From contig NIVC01000712.1 in assembly GCA_002269645.1 (NCBI GenBank), positions 62,001 to 126,000 of the forward strand: a DNA stretch of 64,000 nt, written 5' to 3'. The DNA comes from Macrostomum lignano. Its lineage: Eukaryota. This document shows, piece after piece, positions 4,541 to 58,255 of this stretch (positions within the stretch are counted from its first letter, which is position 1; each line of letters starts with the position of its first letter). A model generated the notes under the pieces. It was not told the origin of the DNA, did not search any database, and saw only the letters and a list, made by a program, of their open reading frames with translations. The position numbers were made by a program, and so were the translations under genes.

Positions 4541-5478
4541 AAATAAATTTCTGTAGTCTATGTATGGCCAGGCCTAAGTGGGGAATATATACATTTCTGT
4601 AGTCTTTGGCCAGGCCCAAGTGGGAAATAAATACATTTCTGTAGTCTATGGCCAGGCCGAAGCGGGGAATAAATACATTTCTGTAGTCTTTGGCCAGGCC
4701 TAAGTGGGGAATAAATACGTTTCTGTAGTCTATGGCCAGGCCGAAGTGGGAAATAAATACATTTCTGTAGTCTATGGCCAGACCCAAGTGGGGAATAAAT
4801 ACATTTCTGTAGTCTATGGCCAGACCCAAGTGGGGAATAAATACATTTCTGTAGTCTATGGCCAGGCCCAAGTGGGGAATAAATACGTTTCTGTAGTCTA
4901 TGGCCAGGCCGAAGTGGGAAATAAATACATTTCTGTAGTCTATGGCCAGACCCAAGTGGGGAATAAATACATTTCTGTAGTCTATGGCCAGGCCCAAGTG
5001 GGGAATAAATAAATTTCTGTAGTCTATGGCCAGGCCGAAGTGGGGAATAAATACATTTCTGTAGTCTATGGCCAGGCCTAAGTGGGGAATAAATACATTT
5101 CTGTAGTCTATGGCCAGGCCGAAGCGGGGAATAAATACATTTCTGTAGTCTATGGCCAGGCCTAAGTGGGAAATAAATACATTTCTGTAGTCTATGGCCA
5201 GGCCGAAGCGGGGAATAAATACATTTCTGTAGTCTTTGGCCAGGCCTAAGTGGGGAATAAATACATTTCTGTAGTCTATGGCCAGGCCGAAGTGGGAAAT
5301 AAATACATTTCTGTAGTCTATGGCCAGACCCAAGTGGGGAATAAATACATTTCTGTAGTCTATGGCCAGGCCCAAGTGGGGAATAAATAAATTTCTGTAG
5401 TCTATGGCCAGGCCGAAGTGGGGAATAAATACATTTCTGTAGTCTATGGCCAGGCCCAAGTGGGGAATAAATATAAAT
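4541..5478. repeat. 42-bp minisatellite, ~22 copies
   Basis: Unit gaataaatacatttctgtagtctatggccaggcccaagtggg; the 14-aa periodicity in the ORF track confirms the unit length. Confidence 0.95.
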
Positions 5479-6081
5479 ATAATTCTCCACATTCTAGTAG
5501 ACTAGTTTTGTAAGCTACTAAAAAAGCTATAATTGCATATTAAATAGTAAATTTTTGTTTAACTTAACGGTTCAAACAGTTGATAATAAAGATTATATAA
5601 ATTGATTATAGCATATTAGAATGGCTGACGAACTTATAGACTGTGATGACTGACTAGCCATAGGAAAAAGTAACGCAAAAACGGCTAGATTTTTTGTTTT
5701 CAAAAACTAAGAAAAAAGCAAATGGTTTATGAGACAGCTGTGATTTAATTAAAAACGCACACACAGCAATAAATTTATGATGCACACACATGGTAACTAA
5801 GCAAGCTGCAGAGGAACACAACAAAAGACACAAAAAGCAAACGAAAAGCAAGGCATAATTACAATACGCAGTTCAATTGTTATTATTATATATATTAGTA
5901 AACAGTTCTTATAAAACAAAGATGTTGTAGCAACTTCAATCAACTCCCATATTGCAACAATTTCAATCACAGGACAATATTATTATTATTATTATTATTC
6001 TTAAAGGGATTAATTCTGATATAATAACAAACACTAAGCTTGAAACGATGGAAGTGCAAGATACGAGCTGTTCCCAGTCAC

Positions 6082-38566: not shown

Positions 38567-41500
38567 ATGAAGATTGTCAGCCTAGCCTTTCTCGTACACC
38601 TGTTCATCCTAGGGCATTTGCATCGACCGGTTAGGTCTCAGCAGGACACCGACCTGCAGCTTCAGTCTGGCCAATTCCAACGGCTGCTCATCTTCGTGGA
38701 GGATCGGCGAGGTGTTCAGAAGACTGCCAGTGAGCTACTTCGGCTGATTAAGGAGATAAAGGTCCGTTGGGACTAGGCTTTACGGGAGGAATTGTTGTGA
38801 TGTCAAGACTTACAGGGGGAATGGCTGAGATGTGAAGGCTGCATGGGGTCAGAAGCTACATGTAGTTTATTGAAAAAATATTATTATATTTCTTGTTGTG
38901 CCCCAAAGTGGGGGGAGGCGCTGATTGCTAGTATATTTACTTATATTTGCTAGAATCTACTTATTGTTACTGATATTGGTAGGCTATACAAGCTCGTAGT
39001 TACAAATTATTGAAATTATTGAATACTGATTCGTGAATTAACGAATCAGAATTACATTTTGTCGGTTTGAGTAGCACCTAATAAGATTTAACATTTAGCA
39101 AGCACAGGTCTAATTCTTCAGCGCAAATTTACAACGAAAGCTAGATTTTATTCATTTGAAATACAAAATGCACCAGCGATAACCAGTTTTACGCATAAAC
39201 TACACCAAAATCTAGTGTGGAATACACAGTCAACCAATATGGATCGCCAGCAACTGGACGAAAGTTTTGCGGTTTCATGAAAAAGTAAAGAAGCACTACC
39301 AATGTGAATCATTGAGTATGTCGCTGAACTTCGCGTTTCAACAGTTTAGCAATTAGTTGTCGATAAATTTATCACTGTCGTCCTTGTATTAATGAAAATC
39401 AAATTTAATTTCCAGAGACACAACCGCCTAGCCAAATAAAACTGACCCTATTTTTGCAAATTTACTTACCAGGTCGGTTTTAATGCGGCTTCCAGGCTGC
39501 TGCAGAACCTGACCGCTGCCGTTGGCCGCCCGATGAGGCTCGGCAGCGCCAGCGTCCTGGTGTCGGCCAGGCTCGGCCGCGAGCTTCGAACCGCCGGACT
39601 GCGCGTCGGAGACGCCCGGTGGCAGCGCCGGAATCGAGCCGACTTCGTTGTCACCCACGACGTCGACGCCGATACCGAGGGCTCGGTCGCCATGGAGATC
39701 GGATGCGGCAAGCCCGGCAAGAAAGTCGTCATGCAGGATGCGAGCTTCACGAATGACTCAAACAGCATTGGTTTGTGCTCAGTTGGTAATTGGTACTCAG
39801 CCAGAGCCCTAATATTCGCACACAATCAACTGACCGAGTCCAGTGTGGAACCCCAATTGCAGTGCACCGCAAGGTCGCTCTGTTCTTCTCGCAGTATCGC
39901 TGGGGTCTGCTGAACGAGCAGCCGGTCGGCAGTCCGATCGAGACGGGTCCCGACGGAGAGCTGCGAGTCTCCGCCTGCTCCGCTGAGCTCAGGGTCCGAC
40001 TGGCCGCCGCGGACGGCAGCTCGACGTGCGAGTTCGACGTGAACTCGCGTCGAACGTCTCGAGGCTGCGCGCCGAAGCTGAGCGAGTCGCAGCCGGACGG
40101 TCCGCTTGCGTCGTTCATGTTCGCTCCGTTCCACCGAGCCGTGAACCGCTTCTGCGATGCAAGGTCGAAGGAGCCTCAGCTGCAGCACAACGGCATGGTG
40201 GACAGTCTGATGAACAGGCAGTGCGACGGGCTGAGCGCAGCTGAAGTGCTGCGGAATCACCGAGACTTCTGGGGAACTCCAGACGGTACTCGGCCAGCGC
40301 CGGGCGACATAAGTTTCGACATCGTCGCTGAGAAGTCCAACAGACGCGTAGTTGTCGTCATGGACACCTCTGGTAGCATGAGTGTGAGTTTGGCTTTTTT
40401 ACAAATACCTTCTTGACTGCAATAGTTGAATTATTTTGTAAGGTTATTTGAAATCCTGAAATTATTTCACTATAGGGACTCAGAATTGCAATGATGATCA
40501 GCGCTGTAAACCAGTTTCTACTGGAAATAATCGAAGACGGTTCCGAATGCGCTTTGATCAGCTTTACAAACAGACATTCGGTTCTGTCAAATTTTGTAAG
40601 CATTCAGTCAAGAAGAGACCGAGAACGCCTGTCGAGTCTTGTGTCGAGTCTCCATGCTAACGGAGGAACGTGCATTGGAGGGGCCGTTTCCGCAGCAGCT
40701 TCCGTAATTCACAAAGCTGTTAATGTCAGGATTTGTATTGAATTTGTATTAAGCACGCAGACTTTGTATTTTAGATGCTTGGCTATCACGGTCCGGCTTC
40801 TGCATCTGCTACAGGTCAGATAATTCTTCTCTCTGATGGCGTAGAAGGCTGTCCCGGACGGCTTAACAGCATGATTAGCTTTCTGGCTCATAGCAGCCTT
40901 GAGGTGGTGTCCATTCGCTACGGTGACAAAGCCGATTCGCGAATGGACCGATTGGCGGAGGTTACTGGCGGCCAGAAGTTCTTCGGTGGCACGTCAATCG
41001 CTGACAGCAGCGGCCTACGACTGGCGCTGGGCGCGACGACAACCGCGATCGACGAGTCAAAGAGGACATTGACGGTGGGCTTGAATAGATAATTGCTTTT
41101 CATAATTTGTAAATGCACAAAAGTGACTGTGATTTTTAGTTTTTCTAAAATTTTTCTACAGCTCACCTCAGAAGAGATCGGCAGTAGATTCGTGCGTCGA
41201 AGGTTTAACGTCGACGAGTCAGTCAGACGCGACCTGGTGTTCCGAGTGACAGTGCCATCAAACACAGGCGCTGTGACGCAGCTTCGGCTGCTGCTGAATG
41301 CGCCGTCGGGTCGTGAGTTCGGCTACAGAAACCGCTCCGACATCTACGAAGCAAATGCAGCGATTGGGACCGTTGCAATCCGGGTACCGGACAGCCAAAT
41401 TCAGGTAAACAAATTAATTTTCATTGCTATTCGCTATTTGATTTTTTTACTCCATTCAGTAACTATTCCGCAAGCAGAAAGGTATTTGGATACTGCGAGA

Positions 41501-42798
41501 TGAAGCCAGCGAAAGCCAACCAGAAAGTCACCCGTCGACGAGAGCTGGAGGCTCCATCGTTGTCACGGGACGGTCGTCTGAGGATTCCGTTGAAGCTCCC
41601 GTAGTCCTAACGGCTGAAGTGCATCCGAGCATCGTTCAAAGAATTTCTGAGGAAACCAAAATTGCCGTCTTTGCTCAGCTACTCAGAGGTCACACGCCTG
41701 TAAGGGGCGGAAGGCTGTACGCCTCAGTGCGGTCAGATTCCAATTTGGTAGCTTCCTTCGATCTCATGGACAACGGTGCTGGTAAGCTTGGGCTTCATTC
41801 AAATAAAATAATTCACACAAGCGTTGCAAAAAAGAAAGATACATTTAATGCATAATTATTCAATACAGGGGCCGATCTGAAGGCCGGAGACGGCACGTAT
41901 TCCGCCTACCTGCCTGTCGCTGAACTAAATGAGCCTCGAGACTTCTCTGTCTCAGTGAAGTCACTCTCCCCAGTGAGCCGCGTCACATCCGCTGGCAAGG
42001 TGACAGTTCGCTATCGGAATCCAAGCTTCAACAGGCAGCTGGTCCCACCGCCGAAGGTCATTGACTTCCGAGTGACGGTGAATACGCTGAACAACTCAGC
42101 TGTTCTCATGTGGACTGCAGTAGAAGATCCGACAGTGAAGAATGCATGTAAGTTCTTTTTTAAAGTAGTAGCTGAAGCAGTATGTTTAATAACAATTCTA
42201 ACTTTTAAGACACCGCATCAACGCCCGAATTTCAGCCGCAAAGTACGAGATCCGGTACTCCAGCTCTCGCGAGCAGCTCATCAAAAACTTCTCAACTTGC
42301 CCGATTCTGACGGTTCTGTCCGAAGGTCTCGGAGCTCCGGGCTCGACTGTGCAGCTGAACGCGTTTCATCAGCTCGCAGGCCGCGGCGCCGTCTTTGTCG
42401 CTGTCTCGGGCGTCTCCGCGCTCAACATCAGCGGGCCGCAGTCGAATCTGATCGGCGTCGACCTGACTCCGCCCTCGGTGACGCAGCTGACGCACATCGG
42501 ACTGCTGCCTGTCGGAGACGGGATGGACGCGACGGAGCCTCCGTCTAGACTGAGCGTTCCAGGCCTGATTGTCGGCGTGACAGCCTCGGTGGCAGCTGCA
42601 GCCGGTCTGGCCTACCTGTCGATGGTGCTGCACCGCGGAGCGAGCTGGGCTCAACCAGCTTTGCTGACTAAAGCAGCCGACACCGGCACTAAGAAGCAAG
42701 GCGAGGCACCAAAGTCGCAGAGTTCCAACAGTGTCTCTGCTGTTCGCTATGCCGACGAGTTATTCGACGGTTCCACTTTGCCCACCCCGGCAATTTGA
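38567..42798 (+). CDS. CLCA: CLCA-like protein A (signal peptide, CLCA_N lacking HExxH, VWA, beta-domains, FN3, TM), ~976 aa
   Basis: Exons 38567-38761, 39473-39770, 39863-40383, 40476-40703, 40775-41074, 41162-41404, 41478-41781, 41869-42147, 42236-42798; GT-AG, phases consistent, 2931 nt. Motifs: GCGKPG, YRWGL, FMF, FCD..H, C.GLSA.EVL..H.DF, VVVVMDTSGSM, GGTCIG, IILLSDG, MDNGAGADLKAGDGTYSAY, PPKVIDF, LMWTA, YEIRYS, C-terminal hydrophobic helix. Confidence 0.9.
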
Positions 42799-42824
42799 AC
42801 GAGTGGGGACGAGAATCGGAAGGC

Positions 42825-42830
42825 AATAAA
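42825..42830 (+). promoter_or_regulatory. Putative polyadenylation signal of CLCA-like A
   Basis: AATAAA 27 nt after the stop codon. Confidence 0.5.
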
Positions 42831-43340
42831 AAGTTCGCTATGCATCTGTTGCAGTGGCGAGGAGAATTGTCTTTGTTTTTTTACAAAATTCTATACGTTC
42901 GTTGGTATCCTTCTTACCAACTCTAATGAAACTAAGGAACTATGGATTGAGAGTTCATATAAAAGACACTTCTTTTTATAGGATTACAGGGGCATTAAGT
43001 TTAATAAAAGTTTTATATTCAGTTTGAAGTCGTATTAACTAAGCTGGAATGTTTGTTCGAAATGTTGCAGCAAAGTGTAAACAACTATACGAGCTATAAT
43101 AAACTAAAAAATCGACTACATTATTGAGTATTTATTCAGGCTTTTCTGCAATCACTTATTCCGAAAGCTTTTTTACTATTTTCATTTTTTAATCAGTCTG
43201 TAACTCAAGACATTTATAATTTCAATAAAAAAATCGATAATGTGCTTCGACTCTGTAGCACATTATTTACTTCTTGAAGTTGATCAGTAAATTATATGAG
43301 CATAAATTTCTGTTTGGAAATATTTCACGTTGTTTCACTA

Positions 43341-43922
<582 letters not shown>

Positions 43923-44125
43923 TGCTCCCACTCATTATAGCATCTACTGATTTTGGTGATACAGGAAGCGCGGCCACAGTTATCAACTAATAGCTTACTT
44001 GGGCGATGGAGTTTACTTCTTACTAAGTTGTTGGCGAATGATAATGACAACTGCTAACTAATTTAGGAAAGTTCATTTGTTTAGACAAGCAGCAAATAAG
44101 GATAAACTACCTATTTTTAGAAGAA

Positions 44126-45806
44126 ACTAGCAATCTTCGCCCCCCGATGGGGGGCGCAAAAATGACGCCAAGTGGTTTTTATTTTGGCCAATGAGTAATC
44201 ACCTTACTTATTATTCAAAATCCATTAATCAAAACTTACTTTTTCTCATTTTTGGCAAAAATAAATTGCCATGAATCAAAACCTTCACCAGCCAAAGTTT
44301 CCTTCATCAGCCCAAAACCCTTTCTCATTCAGCAAATAGTACTTATCCTTTCAAGCACAAACTCTTAGGGCATATCGTCATTGGCCTGGGCATATTCTGG
44401 TCCGCAGCAGGAGCTCAATATGCCATAAGCCTTGATAACATCTCAATAATTTCCCCAGTAAGCCTTGACATCTCAGCAATTCCTCTCAGTAAGCCTTGAC
44501 ATCTCAGCAATTCCCCCCAGTAAGCCTTGAAATCTCAGTAACTCCCCAGTAAGTCTCGAATCTCAGTTATTCTTCCAGTAAGTCTTGAAGTCTAAGCAAT
44601 TTCCCCAGTAAGCCTTGACATCTCAGCAATTCATCCAAGAAAGCCTTGAAATCTCAGCAATTCCCCCAGTAAGCCTTGAAGTCTCAGTAATTCCCCAGTA
44701 AGTCTCGAATCTCAGTAATTCCTCCAGTAAGTCTTGACTTCTCACAATTCCCCCAGTAGGCCTTGACAACTCAGCAATTCCCCAGTAAGCCTTCACATCT
44801 CAGCAATTCCCCCAGTAAGCCTTGACAACTCAGCAATTCCCACAGTAAACCTTGAAATCTCAGAAATTCCCCCAGTAAGCCTTGAAGTCTCAGCAATTCC
44901 CCCAGTAGGCCTTGACAACTCACCAATTCCCCCAGTAGGCCTTGACAACTCAGCAATTCATCCAATAAAGCCTTGAAATCTCAGCAATTTCCTGAGTAAG
45001 CCTTGAAATCTCAGAAATTCCCCCAGTAAGCCTTGAAGTCTCAGAAATTTCCCCAGTAAGCCTCGACATCGCAGCAATTACCCCATTAAGCCTTGACATC
45101 TCAGAAATCCCCCCAGTAAGCCTTGACATTGCAGCAATTAAACTCGAGCCTTGGCATCTACGCAATTCTCCCAGTCCAGTAAGCCTCGAGATTGCAGCAA
45201 TTCCCCCAGTAAGCCTTGACAACTCAGCAATTCATCCAAGAAAGCCTTGAAATCTCAGCAATTTCCTGAGTAAGCCTTGAAATCTCAGAAATTCCCCCAG
45301 TAAGCCTTGACAACTCAGCAATTCCCCCAGTAAACCTTGAAATCTCAGAAATTCCCCCAGTAAGCCTTGAAGTCTCAGTAATTCCCCCAGTAAACCTTGA
45401 AATCTCAGAAATTCCCCCAGTAAGCCTTGAAGTCTCAGCAATTCTCCCAGTAGGCCTTGACAACTCAGCAATTCCCCCAGTAAACCTTGAAATCTCAGAA
45501 ATTCCCCCAGTAAGCCTTGAAGTCTCAGCAATTCTCCCAGTAAGCCTTGACAACTCAGCAATTCCCCAGTAAACCTTGAAATCTCAGAAATTCCCCTAGT
45601 AAGCCTTGACAACTCAGCAATTCCTCCCAGTTAGCCTTTGGCTGGTGAAGGTTTTGATTCATGGCAATTTATTTTTGCCAAAAATGAGAAAAAGTAAGTT
45701 TTGATTAATGGATTTTGAATAATAAGTAAGGTTATTACTCATTGGCCAAAATAAAAACCACTTGGCGTCATTCTTGCGTCCCCCAACGGGGGCTTAAATT
45801 GCTAGT
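44126..45806. mobile_element. Non-autonomous element with ~170-bp inverted repeats and hairpin+CTAG ends, carrying a 30-bp array
   Basis: 44126-44297 and 45636-45806 are reverse complements, nearly identical internally. There is a GC hairpin ~10 nt from each CTAG end and no TSD. Confidence 0.75.
44455..45630. repeat. ~30-bp degenerate minisatellite inside the inverted-repeat element
   Basis: Unit ~ccccagtaagccttgaaatctcagcaattc; 10-aa periodicity in the ORF track. Confidence 0.9.
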
Positions 45807-46351
45807 AGTTGCTTTTAATCAAAAAATGTTCGATTAGTCCAGGCACAAGCTAAAAATAAATGAAAATTAATTTAATATATTTTTATCTCCCACGTGCATA
45901 CTCTGAAGCTTGCGAATAATTTAATTATTTATAGCTCGTAGCATCAGCTCAAGAAGTTAAAGTTTAGTCTATGGCCATAGACGTATTATTATTTTTCGAG
46001 CTCTCACTGCGAGAAAAATACACTAATTAGATAGGGAAAATACAGTTTTTTGAATATTTAAGACCTTTAGAATTGAAGCAGATAAAAGAAATGTTAACCA
46101 TACAATCCTTGGTTGAGTTGCAACTTTTTGGTGAAAACGCAATCAAAATTGGTCAAGAATTGCAGTCTGTAGAGCGTTTTACACGGACAGACAGACATAG
46201 ATTAGAGATTTAGTATATAAGACGATGGGGGACATCTGGATAGAATCTCTGTTTTCTACAAGTAACAAAAAGACAGCCAAAAATCCTTCAAAAAGACAAC
46301 AGACAAACTGCTCAAATGAAGTGCATTGCAAAAAGAAATCATCCCAAGACT

Positions 46352-47092
46352 GCAAGCATCCCCCAGATAGCAAGCATCCCCTAGATAGCAAGCATCCCCT
46401 AGATAGCAAGCATCCCCCAGATAGCAAGCATCCCCTAGATAGCAAGCATCCCCCAGATAGCAAGCATCCCCCAGATAGCAAGCATCCCCCAGATTGCAAG
46501 CATCCCCCAGATAGCAAGCATCCCCAAGATAGCAAGCATCCCTCAGATAGCAAGCATCCCCCAGATAGCAAGCATCCCCCAGATAGCAAGCATCCCCCAG
46601 ATAGCAAGCATCCCCAGATAGCAAGCATCCCCCAGATAGCAAGCATCCCCCAGATAGCAAGCATCCCCCAGATAGCAAGCATCGTCCAGATAGCAAGCAT
46701 CCCCCAGATAGCAAGCATCCCCCAGATAGCAAGCATCCCCCAGATAGCAAGCATCCCCCAGATAGCAAGCATCCCCCAGATAGCAAGCATCCCCCAGATA
46801 GCAAGCATCCCCCAGATAGCAAGCATCCCCCAGATAGCAAGCATCCCCAAGATAGCAAGCATCCCCAAGATAGCAAGCATCCCCCAGATAGCAAGCATCC
46901 CCCAGATAGCAAGCATCCCCAGATAGCAAGCATCCCCCAGATAGCAAGCATCCCCAGATAGCAAGCATCCCCAGATAGCAAGCATCCCCCAGATAGCAAG
47001 CATCCCCCAGATAGCAAGCATCCCCCAGATAGCAAGCATCCCCCAGATAGCAAGCATCCCCAAGATAGATAGCATCCCCAAATAGCAAGCAT
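46352..47092. repeat. 17-18-bp minisatellite, ~41 copies; reverse complement of the GATGCTTGCTAT family
   Basis: Unit gatagcaagcatccccca. Confidence 0.95.
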
Positions 47093-47199
47093 CCACCAGA
47101 CAATAAGTAGCTAGTGCGACAATTTCCTTAGCATTATAGCGGCTCCTTTAAAATTCGCTTATTTTTACGTTTGAAATTGTGTATCTTTTATGTTTAACA

Positions 47200-48812
47200 G
47201 GGTGGCTCTTTTATGTTCTACGCTCGTACATGTTAACTCTTTTATGTTTGATACGGTGGCTTTTCAATGTCTGACATAGTGGCTCTTCTATGTTTGACAT
47301 GGGGGCTCTTCTATGTTTGACATGGGGGCTCTTCTATGTTTGACATGGGGCTCTTCTATGTTTGACAAAGTGGCTTTTTAATGTTTAACATGGTGGCTCT
47401 TTAATGTTCGAAATGGTGGCTCTTTAATGTTCAAAAAGGTGGCTCTTTTATGTTTGACATGGTGGCTCTTTAATGTTTGACATGGTGGCTCTTTAATGTT
47501 AGACAAAGTAGCTCTTTAATGTTTGACATGATGGCTCTTTAATGATAGACATGGTGGCTCTTTAATTTTTGACATGGTGGCTCTTTAATGTTGGACATGG
47601 TGGCTCTTTAATGTTAGACATGGTGGCTCTTTAATGTTCGACATAAAGTCACTTATATGTTTGACATGATGGCTCTTTTATGTTTAACATGGTGGCTCTT
47701 TAATGTTTGACATGGTAGCTCTTTTATGTTCGACATGGTGGCTCTTTAATGTTCGACATGGTGGCTCTTTTATGTTCGACATGGTGTCGCTTTAATGTTT
47801 GACATGGAGTTACGTATATGTTTTACATGGTGGCTCTTAAATGTTTGACATGGTGGCTCTTCAATGTTTGACATGGTGTCTCTTTAACGTTTGACATGGA
47901 GTCATGTATATGTTTGACATGGTGGCTCTTTAATGTTAGACATGGTGGCTCTTTTATGTTTTGCATGGTGGCTCTTTAATGTTAGACATGGTGGCTCTTT
48001 TATGTTTTGCATGGTGGCTCTTTTATGTTCGACATGGTGTCTCTTCAATGCTTGACATGGAGTCACGTATATGTTTGACATGGAGTCATGTATATGTTTG
48101 ACCTGGTGGCTCTTTAATGTTTTATATGGTGGCACTTTCATGTTTGACCTGGTGGCTCTTTAATGTTTGACATGGTGGCTTTTTAATATTTGACATGGTG
48201 GCACTTTCATGTTTGACCTGGTGGGTCTTTAATGTTTGACATGGTACCTCTTTTATGTTCGACATGGTGGCTCTTTAATGTTTTACATGGTGGCTCTTTA
48301 ATGTTTGACATGGTGACTCTTTTATGTTCTACATGGTGGCTCTTTTATGTTCGACATGGTGGCTCTTTAATGTTCTTAATGGTGTCTGTTTTATGTTTGA
48401 CATGGCGGCTCTTTAATGTTTGACATGGTGGCTTTTTAATGTTTGACATGGTGGCTTTTTAATGTTCGACATGGTGGCTCTTTTAGGTTTGAAATGGTGG
48501 CTCTTAAATGTTTGACATTGTGGCTCTTTAATGTTCGACATGGTGGCTCTTTAATGTTTGACATGGTAACTCTTTTATGTTTGATATGGTGGCTCTTTTA
48601 TGTTCGACATGGTGGCTCTTTAATGTTCGACATGGTGGCTCTTTTAGGTTTGAAATGGTGGCTCTTTAATGTTTGACATTGTGGCTCTTTAATGTTTGAA
48701 ATGGTGGCTCTTTAATGTTCGACATGGTGGCTCTTATAGGTTTGAAATGGTGGCTCTTTAATGTTTGACATTGTGGCTCTTTAATGTTTGAAATGGTGGC
48801 TCTTTAATGTTT
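47200..48812. repeat. 23-bp degenerate minisatellite, ~70 copies
   Basis: Unit ttgacatggtggctctttaatgt. Confidence 0.93.
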
Positions 48813-49623
48813 AGAATTTTGTGTTTTTAAGGTGTTTTAATAAAAAAAACATTTTTCACTACTAAGATTCGAACCAAGGTCGCTACATTAGCATTCCAGT
48901 CTGTTTGCATCCGGCTATCTCTTTTCAATCGGAGAACTTGAATTGTGGCCCTTATAATAAATTCTTATAGCAAGTCGGTTAGAGTAAAAAGTTATGACAT
49001 AATCAATTTCTCAGTCAGCCAGTATCAGTCTAAATTCAAGTTAGCAATATGGTTACGCAATTTCAATGAAGTCTTGTGTGCGTTTCTGTGGCACTGTTTT
49101 CAACTTGTTGTGATGCAATCTTTATCACAATCGTAATTCAGCCAGTCAGTTTTTTCTCTAGCATTCTTACAATGCATTTCAGGTCGAAAGAGCTGCTTGA
49201 CCTTTGCAAAAAAGCATGTTTTTCGAATATTTAATCCCTTTAACATTGAGCAATTTCTTAGCCAAGATGCATGTACCGTCCCAGGAAAATTTCTGATCGA
49301 ATGGTGCAAGTTTGAAGAAAATCGGTTGAGCCATTTTTTCTGATATCTATCGCATAGCTAGTTAGTTACAGACATTTCATTTTTAGTATATAGGACTACA
49401 GGTTTCAAAGCTGAAACTGACTATTGCAACTCTGGCTATAATCATAACGTTACCAAAGGGAAATAGCGATGTAATGTAAACTATCGACATGCATAAATAA
49501 AAAGTACGAGTATAATTGCGGTTTCAATATGATTTCCAGTTTTAGAAATCAATTATTAGTCCAACTAACGAAATATTCTGTAAGCTGTTTTGCTGCTACA
49601 GAGAACGATTGTTACTGACCAGG

Positions 49624-52600
49624 ATGCAGGTGAGCACGCTGTTAGTGCTACTGATTGCTGCTCTGGAGCTGTCCGAAGCTCATCAGGATACCGAGCTGCA
49701 TCTGCGGTCAAACCAGTTCCACCGGCTGCTAATCCACGTAGAAGACCATCGAACTGGCCAGCCGCCTGTCAGTCAATCGTATCATCTGATTGAGCAGATC
49801 GAGGTAAGAATCAATGTCTTATAATAAGAAGTTCATGCACAAATGTAATTTTAGGATAAGTCACAGGTGCTCAATCAATCCACAGAAAGGATTTAAGGAC
49901 GCCTCCAGGCTGCTGCAGAACCTGACCGCTGCCGTTGGCCGCCCGGTGAGGCTCGGCAGCGCCAGCGTCCTGGTGTCGGCCAGGCTCGGCCGCGAGCTTC
50001 GAACCACCGGACTGCCGGTCGGAAACGCCCGGTGGCAGCGCCGGAACCGAGCCGACTTCGTTGTCACCCACGACGTCGACGCCGATACCGAGGGCTCGGT
50101 CGCCATAGAGACCGGATGCGGCAAGCCCGGCAAGAAAGTCGTCATGCAGGATGCGAGCTTCACGAATGACTCAAACAGCATTGGTGAGTGCTCAGCTGCT
50201 AATTCGTATTGAGTCAGAGCCCTACTAGTCTCACACAATCAACTGACCGAGTCCAGTGTGGAACCCCAATTGCAGTGCACCGCAAGGTCGCTCTGTTCTT
50301 CTCGCAGTACCGCTGGGGTCTGCTGAGCGAGCAGCCGGTCGACAGTCCGATCGAGACGGGTCCCGACGGAGAGCTGCGAGTCTCCGCCTGCTCCGCTGAG
50401 CTCAGGGTCCGACTGGCCGCCGCGGACGGCAGCTCGACGTGCGAGTTCGACGTGAACTCGCGTCGAACGTCTCGAGGCTGCGCGCCGAAGCTGAGCGAGT
50501 CGCAGCCGGACGGTCCGCTTGCGTCGTTCATGTTCGCTCCGTTCCACCGAGCCGTGAACCGCTTCTGCGATGCAAGGTCGAAGGAGCCTCAGCTGCAGCA
50601 CAACGGCATGGTGGACAGTCTGATGAACAGGCAGTGCGACGGTCTGAGCGCAGCTGAAGTGCTGCGGAATCACCGAGACTTCTGGGGAACTCCAGAGGGT
50701 ACTCAGCCAGCACCTGGCGACATAAGTTTCGACGTCGTCGCTGAGAAGTCCAACAGACGCGTAGTTGTCGTCATGGACGTGTCGGGCAGCATGAGTGTGA
50801 GTGACTTTAGCTTCGAGAACTAAATTCCTTGTGGCGAGTGTGCTGAGTATGAGGACCCTAAGCTAATGTGCAACCAATTGTTAGATCTAGGAGCTATCGG
50901 CATCTCAACAATGGACTAGTGCCATTCAAATTTTCGGCTTGGATTTTTAATCGCACTGACTGAAATTACATGTATTGTAATAATTCATTTCTTTAAATCA
51001 TTAGGGAAATCGGTTGACTATGATGAAGAGTGCAGTCAGCCAGTTCCTTATGGAGATTCTTGAAGATGGCTCCGAATGCGCTTTGATCAGCTTCAAGAGA
51101 CAGCATCAATTGCTTTCCGGATTCACGATAATTCGGTCCAGGGAAAACAGAGAGAATCTGTCCAGACTGGTTGAAGCATTGAATGCGTCAGGAAGCACCT
51201 GCATTGCTGGAGCTGTCTCTGCAGCTGCCTCTGTGAGTACTAAAGATATAGTATACGATCGTATGCGTACGTAAATGTACGTATATATTTCCTAGGCCTT
51301 ACACCAAGAAACTATTTTTATCCAATGAGCAAGGCTCTGAAAGCTTGTCTTGGCTACATAAACATTATCTGCAGCTAAAATGTTTCAGTTCATGGACTTT
51401 TTAGTAATTAGAGAATAATTTGATCGCGTTTTGCAGCTCCTTGGCTATAATAATTCGGTCGGGCTATCTGCAACAACCAACGGACAAATCATACTTCTTT
51501 CTGACGGTGAGGAAGGCTGCAATGGGAGAGGAGGTCTGAACGGCCTCATCAACTCTATGTCCGATTCGAGCATTCAAGTGGTCTCCATTCGCTACGGAGA
51601 CGCCGCTGAAACGCTAATGGACAGGCTGGCCGACGTGACAGGCGGTCAAAAGTTTTTCCAAAGCACAAACATCTTTGATGCCAGCGGACTGCGACTGGCC
51701 CTGGGCGGGACAATCATGGAGCTGGAGGAGTCCAAGAGGTCGCTGACGGTGAGCTGTGCTGAAATACTGTTTGAACTCTGTTGATTGATAGTTTATCTAT
51801 ATGCTGACGATATGGATTGCTTCTGAATTGATTCTCTCAAATTGCAAAAGCGTACTACGAAGTCTTCACCACACCTTGACCGTATTTGTAATCCTTTTGG
51901 CAGCTGATTTCCGAAGTTATCGAAGGCCGCTTGACGCGTCGCAGGTTCTACGTTGACCACTCGGTGCGGCGAGACCTCGTGTTCCGGGTGTCTGCACCGG
52001 CCAATCTTCGTAGAATGCAGCAGCTTCGACTGGTGCTGACGTCTCCGTCAGGAGCGAACTTCAGCTATCGAAGTCCTTCAAGTACATATGAAATCAATGC
52101 TAAGCTCGGAACCATTGCGATCAGGGTTCCTGACTTGTACATTGAGGTAAGCCGAATCCAGCTGTTGCTGATGCCCATTTCGTGAAGTTTATAAAGTAGC
52201 GCAATTGCCACTCATATGGACACTTCAGAACGGTACGTGGACACTAAGAAACGAAAACTACTTGTCGAATGTCGGATTTGTCAGCAAAGATGGCGGCTCC
52301 ATCGCTGTGACTGGGAGAGCAGCTGACAATGCCACTGAAGCCCCCGTTGTTCTCACCGCTGAGGTCAGTCCGAGAAAAGTGGACAAAATCTTTGTTAACA
52401 CCACAATTGTCGTGTTCGCTCGTCTGTTGAGAGGTCATTCGCCTGTGACAGCTGGGAAATTGTTTGCCACTGTGAGATCCGATGAAAAACTGGTTGCCAC
52501 TGTTGATTTGAGGGACAATGGAGCTGGTAAGGGAGTAAAGCATAAGAAAACACAATTGAATTGTACTTTGCTGCTTTGAAGCAAAAAAAATTAGACAACG

Positions 52601-53554
52601 GATTCTTGCGCAATTTAGGAGCCGATCTGAAGATCAGAGACGGCACATACTCCGCCTACCTGCCCATCGATAAACTCAACGAAGCTCGCGACTTCTCCGT
52701 CTCGGTGACGTCACTGTCGCCTGTGAGTCGCGTCGCACCTGCTGGCAAAGTCACAGTTGCTCAGGTGAATGCAGGATTCAACAGGCAGCAAGTGCCACCG
52801 GCTAAGGTGATCGACCTGAGAGTGACAGTGAATGCGATGGACCAAACAGCCATGTTAATTTGGACGGCGATGGAAGATCCGGTCCGACCTAATACTTGTG
52901 AGCCGCGTCTTGCTCTGGTTGGAAATATATCAATGTAAAGTTTGTAATTCAGCGAATTTTCTCCCATTTTTGGTATCCCTGCTTATTCCAGCTGTGAGCT
53001 ATCAACTAAGATACTCAAAATCGCGTATTCAGTTGATTGACAACTTTTCAAAGTGCACAAAACTGAGCTTTGTGTCCAGTGGTCTGACCGGCCCGGGCTC
53101 CACAATCGAGATGAACATCTTCTCTCTGCTGTCAGATAAAGGCGCCGTGTTTCTCGCCGTCGCCGGCGTCTCATCCGCCCGAGTCGTCGGACAGCAGTCT
53201 AACATCGTCGGCGTTGACGTGACGCCACCATCAGCTTTGGAGCTGAGTAGGCTGGAAAAGCTCGGTTTGAATGTCGACGGCATTTACCTGCCGACCCGTA
53301 CAGCTGACTTCTCCGCCGTAGTGGCGGGAGTGTGCGCCTCAGTGGCGGCTGTGAGTAGTCTCGTTACTCTGTCGCTGGTGCTGCAGAGACGGCTGGGCCC
53401 GATGGCGTTGTTTGCCTCGGCTGGAGCAGATGCAGGTCAAGCAGTGGGCCAGATGACCCTCAGCCGTGCGGCGGCGATGCCTCAGCAGGTGTGTGCGGAC
53501 GAGAGTGACTTTACTAATGATGTCTACGACGCTGTCGCCTTTGTGAACGGCTAA
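49624..53554 (+). CDS. CLCA: CLCA-like protein B, tandem paralog of A, ~973 aa
   Basis: Exons 49624-49803, 49886-50183, 50276-50796, 51005-51232, 51437-51748, 51904-52146, 52229-52526, 52619-52897, 52992-53554. Same intron positions and phases as A; 2922 nt. Signal peptide MQVSTLLVLLIAALELSEA, MIDAS DVSGS, TM AVVAGVCASVAAVSSLVTLSLVL. Confidence 0.9.
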
Positions 53555-54659: not shown

Positions 54660-57600
54660 ATGGCCGACTCACTGAAACGCTGGTGGCAAAGGCGACTCTG
54701 CATCAAGAAGGCCAGACGGCACAACCTGCAGGACGCGAGGAAGAGGCCGAGTCTCCAACGACAGCGAAATTGCAGTCTAAAATGTCAGCAACAAGCTGAA
54801 GCAGTCGGCAACAGTGACGCGGCATGCAGGGATGCTGCGTCTGTGCCAATCGCAGCAATGGAAAGCGGCGGCGCCGAAACGGAGCCGCAGCCTCCGCCTC
54901 CTCCGCCGCAGCCACCGCCGTTGCAGCCGCAGCACCTCCAGATGAGTCGCACCACTTTTACATCGGTGCTGCCGCGGGTGGCCAGCCGGCTGCACACAAT
55001 TCACGAAGAGGAGGACGGCGGCAGTCGGAGCGCCTCCAACGCGTTCGGCTGGGCCAGCAGTCAAGAGGAGGCGACCGCGAACGACTATTGTCCGTCGGAC
55101 GACTTGGACTCGCGAGCCATCTTCGATTCCGACCAGTCCGATCTGGACCGAGAGTTGATTGAGTGCAGAAATCAAACAAGAAACAACGCTAAGCTTGAGT
55201 CCGATGATGCAGATCCAGCAGGGCAACTGAAGGCCGAAGCGCCCGCCGCTGTGGCTATGCCTGCGGTAGCTGAGAACTTTGATGACGATGCAGCCGAGGC
55301 TATAGATGCTGCGACTATTTCGGAAGCGTTCACAACAGCCATGACTCGAACAGGAACCGCCACCACCACCTGCACCACGCCGTCACCGTCCATCGCTAGG
55401 CAGAACTCGCCGCTGCCTGAACGATCCTGTATTCAGAGCATGCGATGTCGGCGAAACAATCACCACGGGCATGGCAGAACTTCGAGGCCCAACTGTGGAT
55501 GGCCCAACGTCCGGCTCGAGAAGGTGACAATCCAGCCGCATTCAACAGCTTCTTGTGGCCGTCGTAGCAGCTGCCTCGAGACCCGCCGCAAGTCTGGCCA
55601 GGGCAAGTGCGGCGAGTTCAATTTCGACAAGGCGGAAGAGGACTACAGCGGTAATCGTCTGCGAAATCCGATCCGAGGGCCGTTGGCATCCCCGGAGCAG
55701 TCAAGTGAGGCCGTCTTTGGCATCGCCTGCGCCCTCCAAACCTCGGACTTGGAGTCGTCATTTCCCAGCTCATCTTCTGAGAAGACCAACAGCAGTTTGC
55801 AGAAAATTAGTGGCAGCAAAGCCGCCAAAAATTTTACGAATTTGTCCAATGTCTACGGACAGCCGACCGCGGGTTTGGCTGCCAATGCGGCCGAGTCGGT
55901 AGCCGCTGGCAAACGGCAGTCGTCTCGCATCACTCGAATTTGGCTGGACGTGAAAAGTTCAAGCAGCGACAGAACTGAGGAGCAGAACGGAAAAGCAAGG
56001 GAGAGTCGACAAAAAACAAAGAAGGAAGAGACAATAGAAGAGGAACCGGAAACAGAGCCGGAAACGGAGCCAGAGACGGAGCCAGAAGTAGAGAAGGAGC
56101 ATGAAGAACCGGAAGAGCATGAAGAACCGGAAGAGCAAAAAAACCCTTCGCCACCACCGCAGAATGTTGAGCGGAGAAATTCTTCCGAAAAGAAAATCAA
56201 AGTAAAGCGAGAGCCTCGAAGCAGCCATCATAGTCAGCAGGAAGACTCGGGTGACGACGAACAGGTCTTTGTTTACGAAGCCACGGTGGCATTGGATACC
56301 CCGGCTAACGTCGACAATGCTGAGAAGCCAGCTAAGGAAATCAACAGCTCGGTAAGTTGTAAGTCGGTCTGTAAAAAGTTTATAGTTACCGCTGTAGATA
56401 GTTTGATCTCTAAAATCTTTGAGTTGGTCTTTATTGGTTGATTTGCACCTGTGCTGAATTCTCAACAACCCAGCGAGCAGGTGGTGACAAGCTGGACACC
56501 CAGCCAGAGAAACCGCCGGACTGTGCCGGCTGTTTCGGCTCTTTTGAGAACGGGCGACAACCGCGTTGCAACTGCTGCTGCCCGTCTGTACGCTGCTGTT
56601 GCCGCCATGACAACCATATGATGGGGAGGCTGCCGGATGCCGCGTCATCTGGCTGCGGCGGATGTCATCAGCGCTGCTCGTGCTGCTGCTGCCACAACTG
56701 CAGCACTCGGTCGCCGATAGGCTCCGCCTGTGTCTCTAGCCACAGGTGTTGTAACAACCGCAGCCAGCATCAACGAGGTCATAGGACCATCGGCTGCTCC
56801 GGTGCCTACGGTGGCTGCTGTTGCGGCTGCTGCAACCCGGGCTACCAGCCTCCAATGCGCTACATCAATCCGCACTCGATGGCGCAGTACGACCTGGCCG
56901 AGCCGTGGATTTGGCAGCCGCCCGTGTCGCCAGAGGAGCACCGACAACAGCTTGTCAACGTATCGGAGGGACAAGCAAAAAAGACAATAGCTGAAGCTGA
57001 AAGTCTATTAAAATCGGCTTCCAGGCAGCCTGCGCAAGAATGCGATGTAGACAAGTATGAAAAGGTTTACATGGTTCTTTGTGATAGGAGAGTGTAAATG
57101 ACGCCTTGCCAGACTCTCTACATTTGCTAGACGGTCTAGCTGTTTTCCCTTTCAATCTTTCACTAGATCTCGCAATCCAGCCGTGCGCCCCAGAAAACCC
57201 ACCACCCCAATAGCACACAAACCAGCCGTGCGTCCCAAAAAACCCACCACCCCAATAGCACGCAATCCAGCCGTGCGTCTCAAAAAACCCACCACCCCAA
57301 TAGCACGCAATCCAGCCGTGCGTCCCAAAAAACCCACCACCCCAATAGCACGCAATCCAGCCGTGCGTCCCAAAAAACCCACCACCCCAATAGCACGCAA
57401 TCCAGCCGTGCGTCCCAAAAAACCCACCACCCCAATAGCACGCAATCCAGCCGTGCGTCCCAAAAAACCCACCACCCCAATAGCACGCAATCCAGCCGTG
57501 CGTCCCAAAAAACCCACCACCCCAATAGCACGCAATCCAGCCGTGCGTCCCATAAAACCCACCACCCCAATAGCACACAAACCAGCCGCGCACACCTCAT

Positions 57601-58255
57601 AAAACCCACCACCCCAATAGCACGCAATCCAGCCGTGCGTCCCATAAAACCCACCACCCCAATAGCACACAAACCAGCCGCGCACACCTCATAAAACCCA
57701 CCACCCCAATAGCACGCAATCCAGCCGTGCGCCCCAAAAAACCAACCAACCCCAATCGAACACAATCAAACCAGTGCCTAAAAAGATGCACTATTAGAGC
57801 AAATCTGCAGCACAACGCAGTCTTTTTGTACCCACAATTTTTACAGAACTGACATTCAACAACAAGCTGCGTCACTACAGGATGGAGAGCAGCGGCTCGA
57901 GCAGCCAGCAAAGCATCCTGCCTCTACTAGCAACGTTGCAAACTGGCCCAGGCGGTCGCCAGATCCAAACAGCTGGATGACGGACCGCAACTCTCAACTG
58001 ACCAACCTGGCTTTACTAACTAGCAGCGGCGACTTTCGCGGTCATCGTCGGCAAGATCAAAAATTGTTCTCACCGTCGTCCGGTTTTCGATCCTCGTCGA
58101 CGTCCTCGTCTGACTGCTCGTCAGCTCGGGTGACTATCCAGTCGTCTAGAGACGGCGGCGTCGAACACGCAACCGACGCTAGCGGACGCTATCGGATCTC
58201 GTCCTCGTCTAGCGTTGATGTAGCCGTGAACTTTATTAAAGGACGCCGGCGTTGA
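54660..58255 (+). CDS. Unknown low-complexity protein with a Cys-rich segment (~893 aa, 3 exons)
   Basis: Exon 1 is 54660-56351 (TCG|GTAAGT), exon 2 is 56474-57054 (cag|CGA ... AA|GTATGA) and exon 3 is 57847-58255 (tttacag|A), with phases 0 and 2 consistent. GC-rich with a long open frame and no recognisable domain. The exon 3 link is less certain; the alternative stop is at 57097. Confidence 0.7.
57176..57745. repeat. 45-bp minisatellite, ~13 copies
   Basis: Unit gccgtgcgtcccaaaaaacccaccaccccaatagcacgcaatcca. Confidence 0.95.

What the first reader, a model, noticed from the sequence alone, without database searches (positions are those of the whole stretch)
38567..53554. Tandem CLCA-like pseudoproteases: zinc motif and self-cleavage loop both lost, MIDAS intact
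Seen: at the position of the CLCA motif FVHEWAHLRWGVFDE both genes read VALFFSQYRWGLL(N/S)E, so HExxH has become LFFSQ. Between DGTYSAY and the FN3 domain they read FSVSV(K/T)SLSPVSRV(T/A)(S/P)AGKVTV. From recall, mammalian CLCA1 has about 50 extra residues here (...ALYIPGW...) that contain the autoproteolytic site. The VWA MIDAS (DTSGS/DVSGS, T in GTCI, D in LLSDG), signal peptide and TM helix are retained and both ORFs are intact. Established: CLCAs are self-cleaving metalloproteases whose VWA domain engages TMEM16A and which act in mucus. Inference: a coherent shift to an uncleaved, membrane-tethered, non-catalytic adhesion or receptor-like protein, potentially an undescribed CLCA subfamily.
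Basis: partly seen in the sequence, partly recalled or inferred. Interest (0 to 1): 0.75.

Follow-up and report, generated by a model that had tools for sequence, protein, structure and literature searches.

The report
Flatworm CLCA genes without protease parts
Two neighbouring genes of the flatworm Macrostomum lignano encode membrane-anchored relatives of the CLCA mucus and ion-channel proteins. They have lost both the zinc protease site and the loop that site normally cuts, but keep the metal-dependent binding domain, so they are a lineage-specific example of an already known kind of "dead" CLCA.

Summary
The window is Macrostomum lignano contig NIVC01000712.1. It holds two tandem, intact, 9-exon CLCA-family genes.

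- **Gene A** (38567-42798, 976 aa) equals GenBank PAA78007.1, which is an RNA-derived model.
- **Gene B** (49624-53554, 973 aa) is unannotated and has no expression evidence.

Changes, in human CLCA1 numbering:

- **Lost:** all catalytic residues are replaced (H156L, E157F, H160Q, D167N/S, Y169Q). The 48-residue beta6-beta7 loop (G680-C727), which carries the self-cleavage site, is absent within a continuous exon.
- **Kept:** the second (structural) zinc site, two disulfides, the Met-turn, the full MIDAS, the Ca2+ site of the inhibitory domain, the FnIII-like domain, the signal peptide and a TM helix.

The genes are under purifying selection (omega 0.22 outside a gene-conversion tract that homogenises exons 2-3). 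They belong to a Macrostomum expansion of at least six such paralogue groups. At least one M. lignano paralogue with an intact HExxH also exists.

CLCAs with substituted active sites have been known since Lenart et al. 2013, so the kind is not new. What is distinctive is the complete loss of the loop: 19 other substituted-site CLCAs sampled keep it.

The likely function is an uncleaved, membrane-tethered, MIDAS-dependent binding protein. This is inferred, not shown.

The parts
38567..42798 (+). Gene A, full CDS span (976 aa; = BOX15_Mlig005346g1, PAA78007.1). Approximate domains in aa: signal 1-24, protease-like MH domain 25-305, VWA 320-500, BSR 505-600, inhibitory-domain homologue 615-750, FnIII-like 755-880, TM 899-921, tail 922-976.
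   Evidence: Splice model. 100% identity to P0282 over 976 aa. Pfam. AlphaFold pLDDT 86.7.
38567..38761 (+). Gene A exon 1 (signal peptide, start of MH domain)
   Evidence: donor GTCCGT
39473..39770 (+). Gene A exon 2 (MH domain, includes C125 equivalent GCGKPG)
   Evidence: acceptor TTACCAG, donor GTTTGT
39863..40383 (+). Gene A exon 3 (ex-active-site helix, Zn2 site, Met-turn, start of VWA with DTSGS)
40476..40703 (+). Gene A exon 4 (VWA, MIDAS Thr in GGTCIGG)
40775..41074 (+). Gene A exon 5 (VWA, MIDAS Asp in LLSDG)
41162..41404 (+). Gene A exon 6 (BSR domain)
41478..41781 (+). Gene A exon 7 (linker and first part of the inhibitory-domain homologue)
41869..42147 (+). Gene A exon 8 (Ca2+ site DNGAGAD..DG, beta6/beta7 junction without loop, start of FnIII-like)
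42236..42798 (+). Gene A exon 9 (FnIII-like, TM helix, cytoplasmic tail, stop)
39874..39921 (+). Gene A ex-active-site motif VALFFSQYRWGLLNEQ (H156L, E157F, H160Q, D167N, E168 kept, Y169Q)
41958..41975 (+). Gene A KSL|SPV: the point where the 48-residue beta6-beta7 self-cleavage and inhibitory loop is missing. The DNA is continuous and lies inside exon 8.
40363..40377 (+). Gene A MIDAS DxSxS (DTSGS)
42562..42630 (+). Gene A predicted TM helix GLIVGVTASVAAAAGLAYLSMVL
   Evidence: Hydropathy. AlphaFold helix 908-933 of P0282.
49624..53554 (+). Gene B, full CDS span (973 aa). Unannotated in GCA_002269645.1; same domain order as A.
49624..49803 (+). Gene B exon 1
   Evidence: donor GTAAGA
49886..50183 (+). 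Gene B exon 2
50276..50796 (+). Gene B exon 3
51005..51232 (+). Gene B exon 4
51437..51748 (+). Gene B exon 5
51904..52146 (+). Gene B exon 6
52229..52526 (+). Gene B exon 7
52619..52897 (+). Gene B exon 8
52992..53554 (+). Gene B exon 9
50287..50334 (+). Gene B ex-active-site motif VALFFSQYRWGLLSEQ (D167S)
52708..52725 (+). Gene B TSL|SPV: loop-deletion point
50776..50790 (+). Gene B MIDAS DVSGS
53315..53383 (+). Gene B predicted TM helix AVVAGVCASVAAVSSLVTLSLVL
39491..40365 (+). Gene-conversion tract in A. Its partner in B is about 49904-50778. It covers exon 2, intron 2 and exon 3, about 96% nucleotide identity against about 68% elsewhere.

Best explanation
Genes A and B are tandem paralogues from a Macrostomum-lineage expansion of CLCA-family proteins that have stopped being proteases.

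Shown from sequence:
- The catalytic zinc site is gone: both His ligands, the general-base Glu, the Asp ligand and the neighbouring Tyr are replaced.
- The 48-residue loop of the inhibitory domain is cleanly deleted. In human CLCA1 this loop sits in the active-site cleft and is the self-cleavage substrate.
- The parts that hold the protease-like domain together are kept: the second zinc site E168/C187/C250/H255, two disulfides and the Met-turn.
- Also kept are a complete VWA MIDAS, the Ca2+ site of the inhibitory domain, the FnIII-like domain, a signal peptide and a single C-terminal TM helix.
- Both genes are under purifying selection.

Inferred:
- With neither enzyme nor substrate loop, the protein cannot self-cleave. 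It has no furin-type site, so it most likely reaches the cell surface as one uncut type-I membrane glycoprotein with its whole ectodomain tethered.
- It then acts by binding rather than cutting. The MIDAS of the VWA domain engages a ligand in a metal-dependent way. Candidates are an anoctamin/TMEM16-type channel in the same membrane, or a matrix or mucus component.
- The former protease domain serves as a conserved scaffold or second binding face. Its ex-active-site helix is the most conserved stretch among the paralogues.
- The loop was probably lost because its only job was to serve the protease.
For: - **Family membership.** Pfam CLCA above the gathering score plus VWA. VWA homologous to human CLCA1 6pyo at 1.6e-11. 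The modelled VWA superposes on it with TM 0.86-0.89 and rmsd 2.1-2.6 A.
- **Residue table.** Against gibbon CLCA1, which carries human numbering: H156L, E157F, H160Q, D167N/S and Y169Q. Retained are E168, C187, C250, H255, C125, C267, C210, C223, M238, MIDAS D312/S314/S316/T383/D412, and Ca-site D644/D650/D655.
- **Roles of these residues.** Taken from the CLCA1 cryo-EM preprint.
- **Loop.** From DGxY to the end of beta7 there are 39-40 residues in 10 flatworm sequences. The median is 78 in 87 intact CLCAs and 75 in 19 other substituted ones.
- **No alternative site.** There is no HExxH or HxxEH in either protein or in any + frame of either locus, introns included. There is no [RK]x[RK]R in A or B.
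- **Selection.** omega is 0.22 over 566 codons of exons 4-9, and 0.11 in the VWA. B is not significantly faster than A (32 vs 46 unique changes, p = 0.11).
- **Transcription.** Gene A equals an RNA-derived GenBank model.
- **Structure model.** AlphaFold model of A has pLDDT 86.7 and pTM 0.84. The ex-active-site helix and the TM helix are both predicted.
- **Conservation.** The ex-active-site window has 10 of 15 invariant columns among five paralogue groups, against a 15% background. This is the highest in the protein.
- **Precedent and partners.** MIDAS-dependent action of CLCA1 and CLCA4 VWA on TMEM16A/B is published. M. lignano has anoctamin homologues.
Against: - No experiment shows absence of cleavage, surface localisation or any ligand.
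- Other proteases or sheddases could still cut the ectodomain.
- Gene B lacks any transcript evidence. No gene is called at its place in the RNA-based annotation, and its protein is not in the 15-billion-sequence collection.
- The AlphaFold alignment is dominated by canonical CLCAs, so the model leans towards the family fold. Coordinates could not be inspected.
- The fold search with a protease-domain-only model of a paralogue gave only weak matches (best E = 0.006). Still, 38 of the top 50 are metzincin catalytic domains, and the non-catalytic ADAM22 is first.
- In human CLCA1 and CLCA2 self-cleavage is needed for activity. An uncleaved protein might therefore be inactive in the channel-regulating sense and do something else.
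Confidence: 0.72

Rival explanations
1. One or both genes are decaying duplicates (unprocessed pseudogenes), and the lost motif and loop are simply decay.
For: Gene B is not annotated in the RNA-seq-derived GenBank annotation and has no matching protein in public collections. B has slightly more lineage-specific changes than A (46 vs 32). The M. lignano genome is highly redundant.
Against: - Both reading frames are open through 9 exons, with canonical GT-AG at all 16 introns.
- omega is 0.22 outside the conversion tract and 0.11 in the VWA.
- The rate difference is not significant (p = 0.11).
- The same substitutions and the same loop deletion are shared by paralogues only 25-45% identical. 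The loss is therefore old and has been maintained.
- Gene A is RNA-supported.
Confidence: 0.07
2. The proteins are still cut into two fragments, or shed from the membrane, by another protease (a convertase, a sheddase, or the HExxH-bearing CLCA paralogue acting in trans). They would then act as soluble mucus or matrix proteins like CLCA1.
For: - A catalytic-type paralogue exists in M. lignano (P0138, HEFAH..NEY).
- Other substituted-site CLCAs often carry furin-like motifs in the retained loop (7 of 19 vs 7 of 87).
- Some M. lignano paralogues have multibasic motifs in the BSR-ID linker.
- There is a low-confidence juxtamembrane stretch (P0282 893-907).
Against: A and B have no [RK]x[RK]R motif anywhere. 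The loop that is the substrate in all studied CLCAs is absent. The BSR-ID linker of A and B carries no basic cluster.
Confidence: 0.15
3. The proteins keep hydrolytic activity through a different metal site, for example the retained E168/C187/C250/H255 site, or through residues recruited elsewhere.
For: The second zinc site is fully conserved, and the ex-active-site helix is under strong constraint.
Against: In CLCA1 that site is described as structural, tightly bound and distant from the substrate cleft. No HExxH or HxxEH exists anywhere. The general base and all three catalytic ligands are replaced by L, F, Q and N/S, which cannot bind zinc or activate water.
Confidence: 0.04
4. The missing motif and loop are artefacts of a wrong gene model (a skipped exon or a wrong frame).
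For: The finding was read from raw frames. Exon 2 to exon 3 needs a 92-nt intron that changes frame.
Against: The model equals an RNA-derived GenBank CDS residue for residue. The motif lies in the middle of exon 3, and the loop-deletion point lies in the middle of exon 8 in continuous DNA. No HExxH is encoded in any + frame of the loci. Five independent paralogue models show the same features.
Confidence: 0.02

Closest known systems
Mammalian CLCA1 / CLCA4 (self-cleaving 'CLCAsin' metzincins, regulators of TMEM16A/B)
   Same: Homologous over the whole ectodomain, with the same domain order MH-VWA-BSR-ID-FnIII. Also shared are a complete MIDAS, the second zinc site, the C125-C267 and C210-C223 disulfides, the Met-turn and the ID Ca2+ site.
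   Different: There are no catalytic residues, no beta6-beta7 cleavage and inhibitory loop, and no C200-C205 disulfide. The flatworm proteins are membrane-anchored, whereas CLCA1 is secreted. Identity is only about 23%.
Mammalian CLCA2 (type-I transmembrane CLCA, cleaved at about residue 708)
   Same: A type-I membrane topology with a single C-terminal TM helix and a short tail.
   Different: CLCA2 keeps HExxH and is cut, releasing a diffusible ectodomain. Its self-cleavage is reported as required for function (PMC10669480 abstract). The flatworm proteins have no means of self-cleavage.
CLCA homologues with substituted HExxH (Lenart et al. 2013, PMC3650047; here also sea urchin, crab, pearl oyster, Aplysia, Bulinus, gar, bowfin)
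   Same: A CLCA_N domain with His/Glu/His replaced, arising independently in several lineages. The function is unknown.
   Different: All 19 other substituted-site sequences sampled keep a beta6-beta7 segment (54-127 residues, median 75), and 7 carry a furin-like motif in it. The Macrostomum clade has none of it (39-40 residues) and forms its own clade in the tree (100% and 86% bootstrap).
Non-catalytic ADAMs (ADAM22/23/11), which act as receptors
   Same: A metzincin-type domain that has lost the zinc site, sits in a type-I membrane protein, and is used for binding. ADAM22 was the top fold match of the protease-like domain model, though weakly (E = 0.006).
   Different: A different family (M12) with a different domain set (disintegrin, Cys-rich, EGF) and no VWA. 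The match is below the usual significance level.
Calcium-channel alpha2-delta subunits
   Same: An extracellular, membrane-tethered protein whose VWA domain with MIDAS regulates an ion channel. It is the next-best sequence match of the VWA domain in the PDB (E about 8e-4).
   Different: No protease-like, BSR, ID or FnIII domains, and a different anchoring. The homology is limited to the VWA fold.

Membership tests
CLCA protein family (homology) | CLCA N-terminal domain (Pfam PF08434) above the gathering score | tested here: met
   32.6 bits (A) and 39.0 bits (B) against a cut-off of 25.6
CLCA protein family (homology) | VWA domain with complete MIDAS (DxSxS...T...D) directly after the N-terminal domain | tested here: met
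   VWA_2 3e-13 and 9e-15. 6pyo 1.6e-11. D312, S314, S316, T383 and D412 all conserved.
CLCA protein family (homology) | Full domain order MH-VWA-BSR-ID-FnIII-like | tested here: met
   The profile aligns end to end with canonical CLCAs. The alignment covers all domains. The AlphaFold model is confident through residue about 890.
CLCAsin metzincin proteases (functional class) | Zinc-binding motif HExxHxxxGxxDEY (H156, E157, H160, D167, Y169) | tested here: not met
   LFxxQ...N/S-E-Q; no HExxH or HxxEH anywhere
CLCAsin metzincin proteases (functional class) | Beta6-beta7 extension of the inhibitory domain with the autocleavage site | tested here: not met
   Absent; 39-40 residues against a median of 78
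CLCAsin metzincin proteases (functional class) | Met-turn and second zinc site (E168, C187, C250, H255) | tested here: met
   All conserved in A and B. The Met is Leu in the other paralogues.
CLCAsin metzincin proteases (functional class) | Metzincin-like fold of the N-terminal domain | tested here: inconclusive
   The protease-domain-only model of paralogue P0007 has pLDDT 80.9. The best Foldseek E is 0.006 and none is below 0.001, but 38 of the top 50 hits are metzincin catalytic domains.
CLCAsin metzincin proteases (functional class) | Zinc-dependent self-cleavage into N- and C-terminal fragments | not testable with these tools
   Needs expression and western blot
Catalytically substituted CLCA homologues (Lenart et al. 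2013) | CLCA_N domain with substitution at His, Glu or the second His of HExxH | tested here: met
   All three are substituted. The class is described in PMC3650047.
Unprocessed pseudogene | Frameshifts, stops, broken splice sites, or omega near 1 | tested here: not met
   Open frames, 16 canonical introns, omega 0.22
Cell-surface MIDAS receptors / adhesion proteins | Membrane anchoring with the VWA outside | tested here: met
   Signal-like N-terminus and a single C-terminal hydrophobic helix followed by basic residues. This is a prediction only.
Cell-surface MIDAS receptors / adhesion proteins | Metal-dependent binding of a defined ligand | not testable with these tools
   No ligand known

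The most novel reading that the evidence does not exclude
The Macrostomum clade would be a natural 'clean deletion' experiment on the CLCA scaffold. The protease site and its autoinhibitory substrate loop were removed together, while the structural zinc site and the MIDAS were kept. The family then expanded to at least six paralogue groups in tandem clusters as constitutively uncleaved, membrane-tethered MIDAS receptors. Its re-fixed ex-active-site helix (L-x-[FHY]-F-S-Q-[YF]-R-W-G-L) would form a new binding surface. If true, this would show two things: that the loop exists only to serve the protease, and that CLCA proteins have a protease-independent core function, possibly channel regulation in cis.
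Probability: 0.3. Interest if true: 0.55.

Novelty: new variant of a known kind. Interest (0 to 1): 0.4.

Why it matters
CLCA proteins are studied for mucus disease and chloride-channel regulation. It is still debated which of their effects need the protease and which need only the VWA domain.

Inactive CLCA homologues are known from sequence surveys, but none has been studied functionally.

This clade lacks both the enzyme and its internal substrate, yet stays under selection and has multiplied. It sits in a flatworm with working transgenesis and RNAi. That makes it a ready-made system for asking what the non-proteolytic part of a CLCA does.

It also gives independent evolutionary support for the cryo-EM proposal that the beta6-beta7 loop is a dedicated autoinhibitor and substrate.

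The matter is of moderate interest to specialists. It is not a new kind of system.

Tried and rejected
- **Representative-library search.** I used public M. lignano models instead.
- **Word-indexed homology searches.** With gene B and with a clade profile these found only M. lignano proteins. The clade's spread in other flatworms therefore remains unknown. The only non-lignano member is a transcript contig from run SRR30276804, whose species I could not determine.
- **Expression data.** Text searches for Macrostomum plus CLCA names, and for the six Mlig gene ids, gave nothing useful. The same holds for look-ups in the supplements of two M. lignano papers.
- **PDB.** The copy holds no full-length CLCA1, so the full-length model only matched VWA domains.
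- **Technical failures.** A first bootstrap run timed out and was redone with a faster distance routine. A 140-sequence alignment was too large for structure prediction and was cut to 81.
- **Rejected: selection explains the near-identity of exons 2-3.** dS there is 0.058 against about 1.5 elsewhere, and the intron between them is also similar. This is gene conversion, not constraint.
- **Rejected: an alternative acceptor in intron 2.** The first candidate acceptor (TCCAG|TGT) gives the wrong frame. TTGCAG|TGC is the one used by the RNA-based model.

Full report
**What the sequence is**

The window is eukaryotic, intron-bearing DNA. A 24,253-base stretch of Macrostomum lignano contig NIVC01000712.1 (assembly GCA_002269645.1, positions 90546-114798) is identical to window 28546-52798. 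Window position 1 is therefore record position 62001.

**Gene models**

Stop-free segments in three frames, followed by a search for frame-keeping GT-AG introns shared by both copies, gave two 9-exon genes on the + strand.

- Gene A: 38567-38761, 39473-39770, 39863-40383, 40476-40703, 40775-41074, 41162-41404, 41478-41781, 41869-42147, 42236-42798 (976 aa).
- Gene B: 49624-49803, 49886-50183, 50276-50796, 51005-51232, 51437-51748, 51904-52146, 52229-52526, 52619-52897, 52992-53554 (973 aa).

Seven of the nine exons have the same length in both genes.

The gene A model is 100% identical over all 976 residues to GenBank PAA78007.1 (BOX15_Mlig005346g1). The GenBank annotation of this assembly was built only from a genome-guided RNA-seq transcriptome (PMC5730564). 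Gene A is therefore transcribed and its splicing is RNA-supported.

Two 97%-identical copies on other contigs (Mlig005054g1, Mlig018751g1) fit the known redundancy of the DV1 genome.

Gene B is different.

- No gene is called at its place in that annotation.
- Its exact protein is not in the 15-billion-sequence collection.
- The only traces are 187-aa fragments at 94% identity, and read-through tails on two older fused models.

**Check of the observation**

All quoted strings are present, and the coordinates are the ATG of A and the stop of B.

- Pfam gives CLCA (PF08434) at 32.6 and 39.0 bits against a gathering score of 25.6, plus VWA_2 and VWA.
- The VWA domain matches the crystal structure of the human CLCA1 VWA domain (6pyo) at 1.6e-11.
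- A profile of the M. lignano proteins searched against 1.84 billion representatives found 1,602 proteins. The nearest were a handful of M. lignano proteins, followed by canonical CLCAs from amphioxus onwards at 1e-64.

In a 148-sequence alignment the canonical vHEWaHLRWGvFDEY aligns without gaps to VALFFSQYRWGLL(N/S)EQ.

**Residue-level comparison**

Gibbon CLCA1 (P0270, 914 aa) carries the same residue numbers as the human protein at all 25 positions named in the CLCA1 cryo-EM preprint. The roles below come from that preprint.

| Feature in human CLCA1 | State in genes A and B |
|---|---|
| Catalytic zinc ligands H156, H160, D167 | L, Q, N (A) or S (B) |
| General base E157 | F |
| Y169 | Q |
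| Second zinc site E168, C187, C250, H255 | conserved |
| Disulfides C125-C267 and C210-C223 | conserved |
| Met-turn M238 | conserved |
| MIDAS D312, S314, S316, T383, D412 | conserved |
| Inhibitory-domain Ca2+ ligands D644, D650, D655 | conserved |
| Beta6-beta7 extension G680-C727 | absent |

That extension lies in the active-site cleft and contains the G694|A695 self-cleavage site. In the flatworm proteins beta6 (..FSVSVKSL) runs straight into beta7 (SPVSRVTSAGKVTV). The junction lies in continuous DNA in the middle of exon 8 (41958-41975 in A, 52708-52725 in B).

No HExxH or HxxEH is encoded in either protein, or in any + frame of either locus, introns included. The losses are therefore real and not artefacts of the model.

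**How unusual this is within the family**

I counted residues from the conserved DGxY to the end of beta7.

| Group | n | Length in residues |
|---|---|---|
| CLCAs with intact HExxH | 87 | median 78; minimum 68, apart from one fragmentary model |
| Other CLCAs with substituted motifs | 19 | 54-127, median 75 |
| Flatworm-clade sequences | 10 | 39-40 |

The other substituted-site proteins come from sea urchins (Lytechinus, Diadema), crabs (Eriocheir, Scylla), a pearl oyster, Aplysia, Bulinus, gar and bowfin. Seven of those 19 carry a furin-like [RK]x[RK]R in the retained loop, against 7 of 87 intact ones.

That CLCAs often have substituted active sites, with at least five independent losses, was published in 2013 (PMC3650047). 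That paper mentions no flatworms and does not discuss the loop.

So dead CLCAs are a known kind. Complete co-loss of the loop is, in this sample, peculiar to the Macrostomum clade.

**The clade**

A neighbour-joining tree (845 columns, 100 bootstraps) groups A, B, Mlig028759 (P0003), P0004 and Mlig006068 (P0155) at 100%. Mlig010915 (P0008) joins them at 86%.

Their motifs are LFxxQ, LHxxQ, LYxxQ, LYxxQ and RExxI. All of them lack the loop.

A second tandem cluster of such genes lies on contig NIVC01002494.1.

A transcript contig from run SRR30276804 (P0009, YExxQ, no loop) pairs in the tree with M. lignano A0A1I8FB37 (P0138). P0138 is a fragmentary model that keeps HEFAH...NEY and appears to keep a long loop. 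M. lignano thus has at least one catalytic-type CLCA besides the dead ones.

**Are the genes alive?**

- Over exons 4-9 (566 codons) dN/dS is 0.22, and 0.11 in the VWA domain. dS is about 1.5, so the duplication is old.
- Exon 2, intron 2 and exon 3 (about 39491-40365 in A and 49904-50778 in B) are about 96% identical, with dS 0.058. This is a gene-conversion tract that homogenises the protease-like domain of the two neighbours.
- A relative-rate test with two outgroups shows no significant acceleration of B (32 vs 46 unique changes, p = 0.11).
- Among five paralogue groups, the single most conserved 15-residue window of the whole protein is the ex-active-site helix and Gly-turn. It has 10 of 15 invariant columns against 15% overall, ahead of the MIDAS block at 9 of 15. 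This argues for a new constraint there rather than drift.

**Topology and structure**

Each protein has a hydrophobic N-terminus and one strong C-terminal hydrophobic segment followed by basic residues. Each also has 7-11 N-glycosylation sequons and no furin-type motif.

AlphaFold2 on PAA78007.1 with an 81-sequence alignment gave mean pLDDT 86.7 and pTM 0.84.

- It predicts a helix at the ex-active-site position (residues 169-185 of P0282, which are 162-178 of gene A).
- It predicts a TM helix at 908-933.
- The tail is of low confidence.

The modelled VWA domain superposes on 6pyo at TM 0.86-0.89 and rmsd 2.1-2.6 A.

**Mechanism**

Shown: there is no catalytic site and no substrate or inhibitor loop. 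The scaffold is retained, the MIDAS is intact, and selection is purifying.

Inferred: the protein is not self-cleaved and stays as a single-chain type-I membrane protein. It acts through metal-dependent binding by the VWA domain, with the ex-protease domain as scaffold or second binding face.

The published precedent is that the VWA domains of CLCA1 and CLCA4 potentiate TMEM16A and TMEM16B through the MIDAS. M. lignano has several anoctamin homologues. A matrix or mucus ligand is equally possible.

The loss of the loop together with the active site fits the cryo-EM proposal that the loop is a dedicated autoinhibitor and substrate.

**Verdict**

It is a lineage-specific variant of a known kind. 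It is of moderate interest, mainly as a natural separation-of-function case in a genetically tractable flatworm.

Noticed in passing
window 39491-40365 and 49904-50778: This is a gene-conversion tract between the two tandem genes. It covers exon 2, intron 2 and exon 3 (the protease-like domain). Nucleotide identity is about 96% and dS is 0.058, against about 68% identity and dS about 1.5 in the rest of the genes. One 300-bp stretch (39930-40229) has no difference at all.
   Followed up: yes
window 42800-49600: The 6.8-kb spacer between the two genes is mostly tandem arrays: (TAG)n at 43339-43921, a 30-bp unit x40 at 44438-45638, an 18-bp unit x42 at 46352-47100, and a 23-bp unit x69 at 47237-48812.
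   Followed up: partly
window 4539-5492, 7147-11499, 26319-26978, 56955-57685, 61245-62128: Further long minisatellite arrays are present, the largest about 4.3 kb. They create long spurious ORFs in several frames.
   Followed up: no
window 20194-20832 (-), 14582-15298 (-), 62141-62776 (-): These are exons of neighbouring genes. They carry FERM_M plus FERM_C (7e-22, 1.7e-20), SPRY (1.6e-20) and RIB43A (3e-67) domains.
   Followed up: partly
window 54660-56441 (+): A 593-aa open frame lies just downstream of gene B. It is low-complexity, rich in Pro, Glu and Ser, and has no Pfam match. Whether it is a gene was not examined.
   Followed up: no
L001 (NIVC01002494.1) 1-3931 and 10001-15269: This is a second tandem cluster of HExxH-less CLCA-like genes in M. 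lignano (MALYFSQFRWG and LTLHFSQYRWG). A third related gene fragment, P0021, lies on the same contig.
   Followed up: partly
proteins P0030, P0033, P0040, P0103, P0104, P0106, P0119 (not in the window): Among CLCAs of other animals with substituted active sites, 7 of 19 carry a furin-like [RK]x[RK]R motif in the retained beta6-beta7 loop, against 7 of 87 with intact HExxH. This suggests that cleavage may have been handed over to convertases in those lineages.
   Followed up: partly
proteins P0008, P0155, P0004, P0021 (M. lignano paralogues): Several paralogues have multibasic motifs (RRKR, RRFRRQ, RRIRRQ) in the linker between the BSR and inhibitory-domain homologues. Genes A and B have none there.
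   Followed up: no
protein P0138 (M. lignano A0A1I8FB37): This is a fragmentary, probably frame-shifted model of a CLCA with intact HEFAH...NEY and an apparently long beta6-beta7 segment. It is the only catalytic-type paralogue seen. Its locus could not be fetched.
   Followed up: partly
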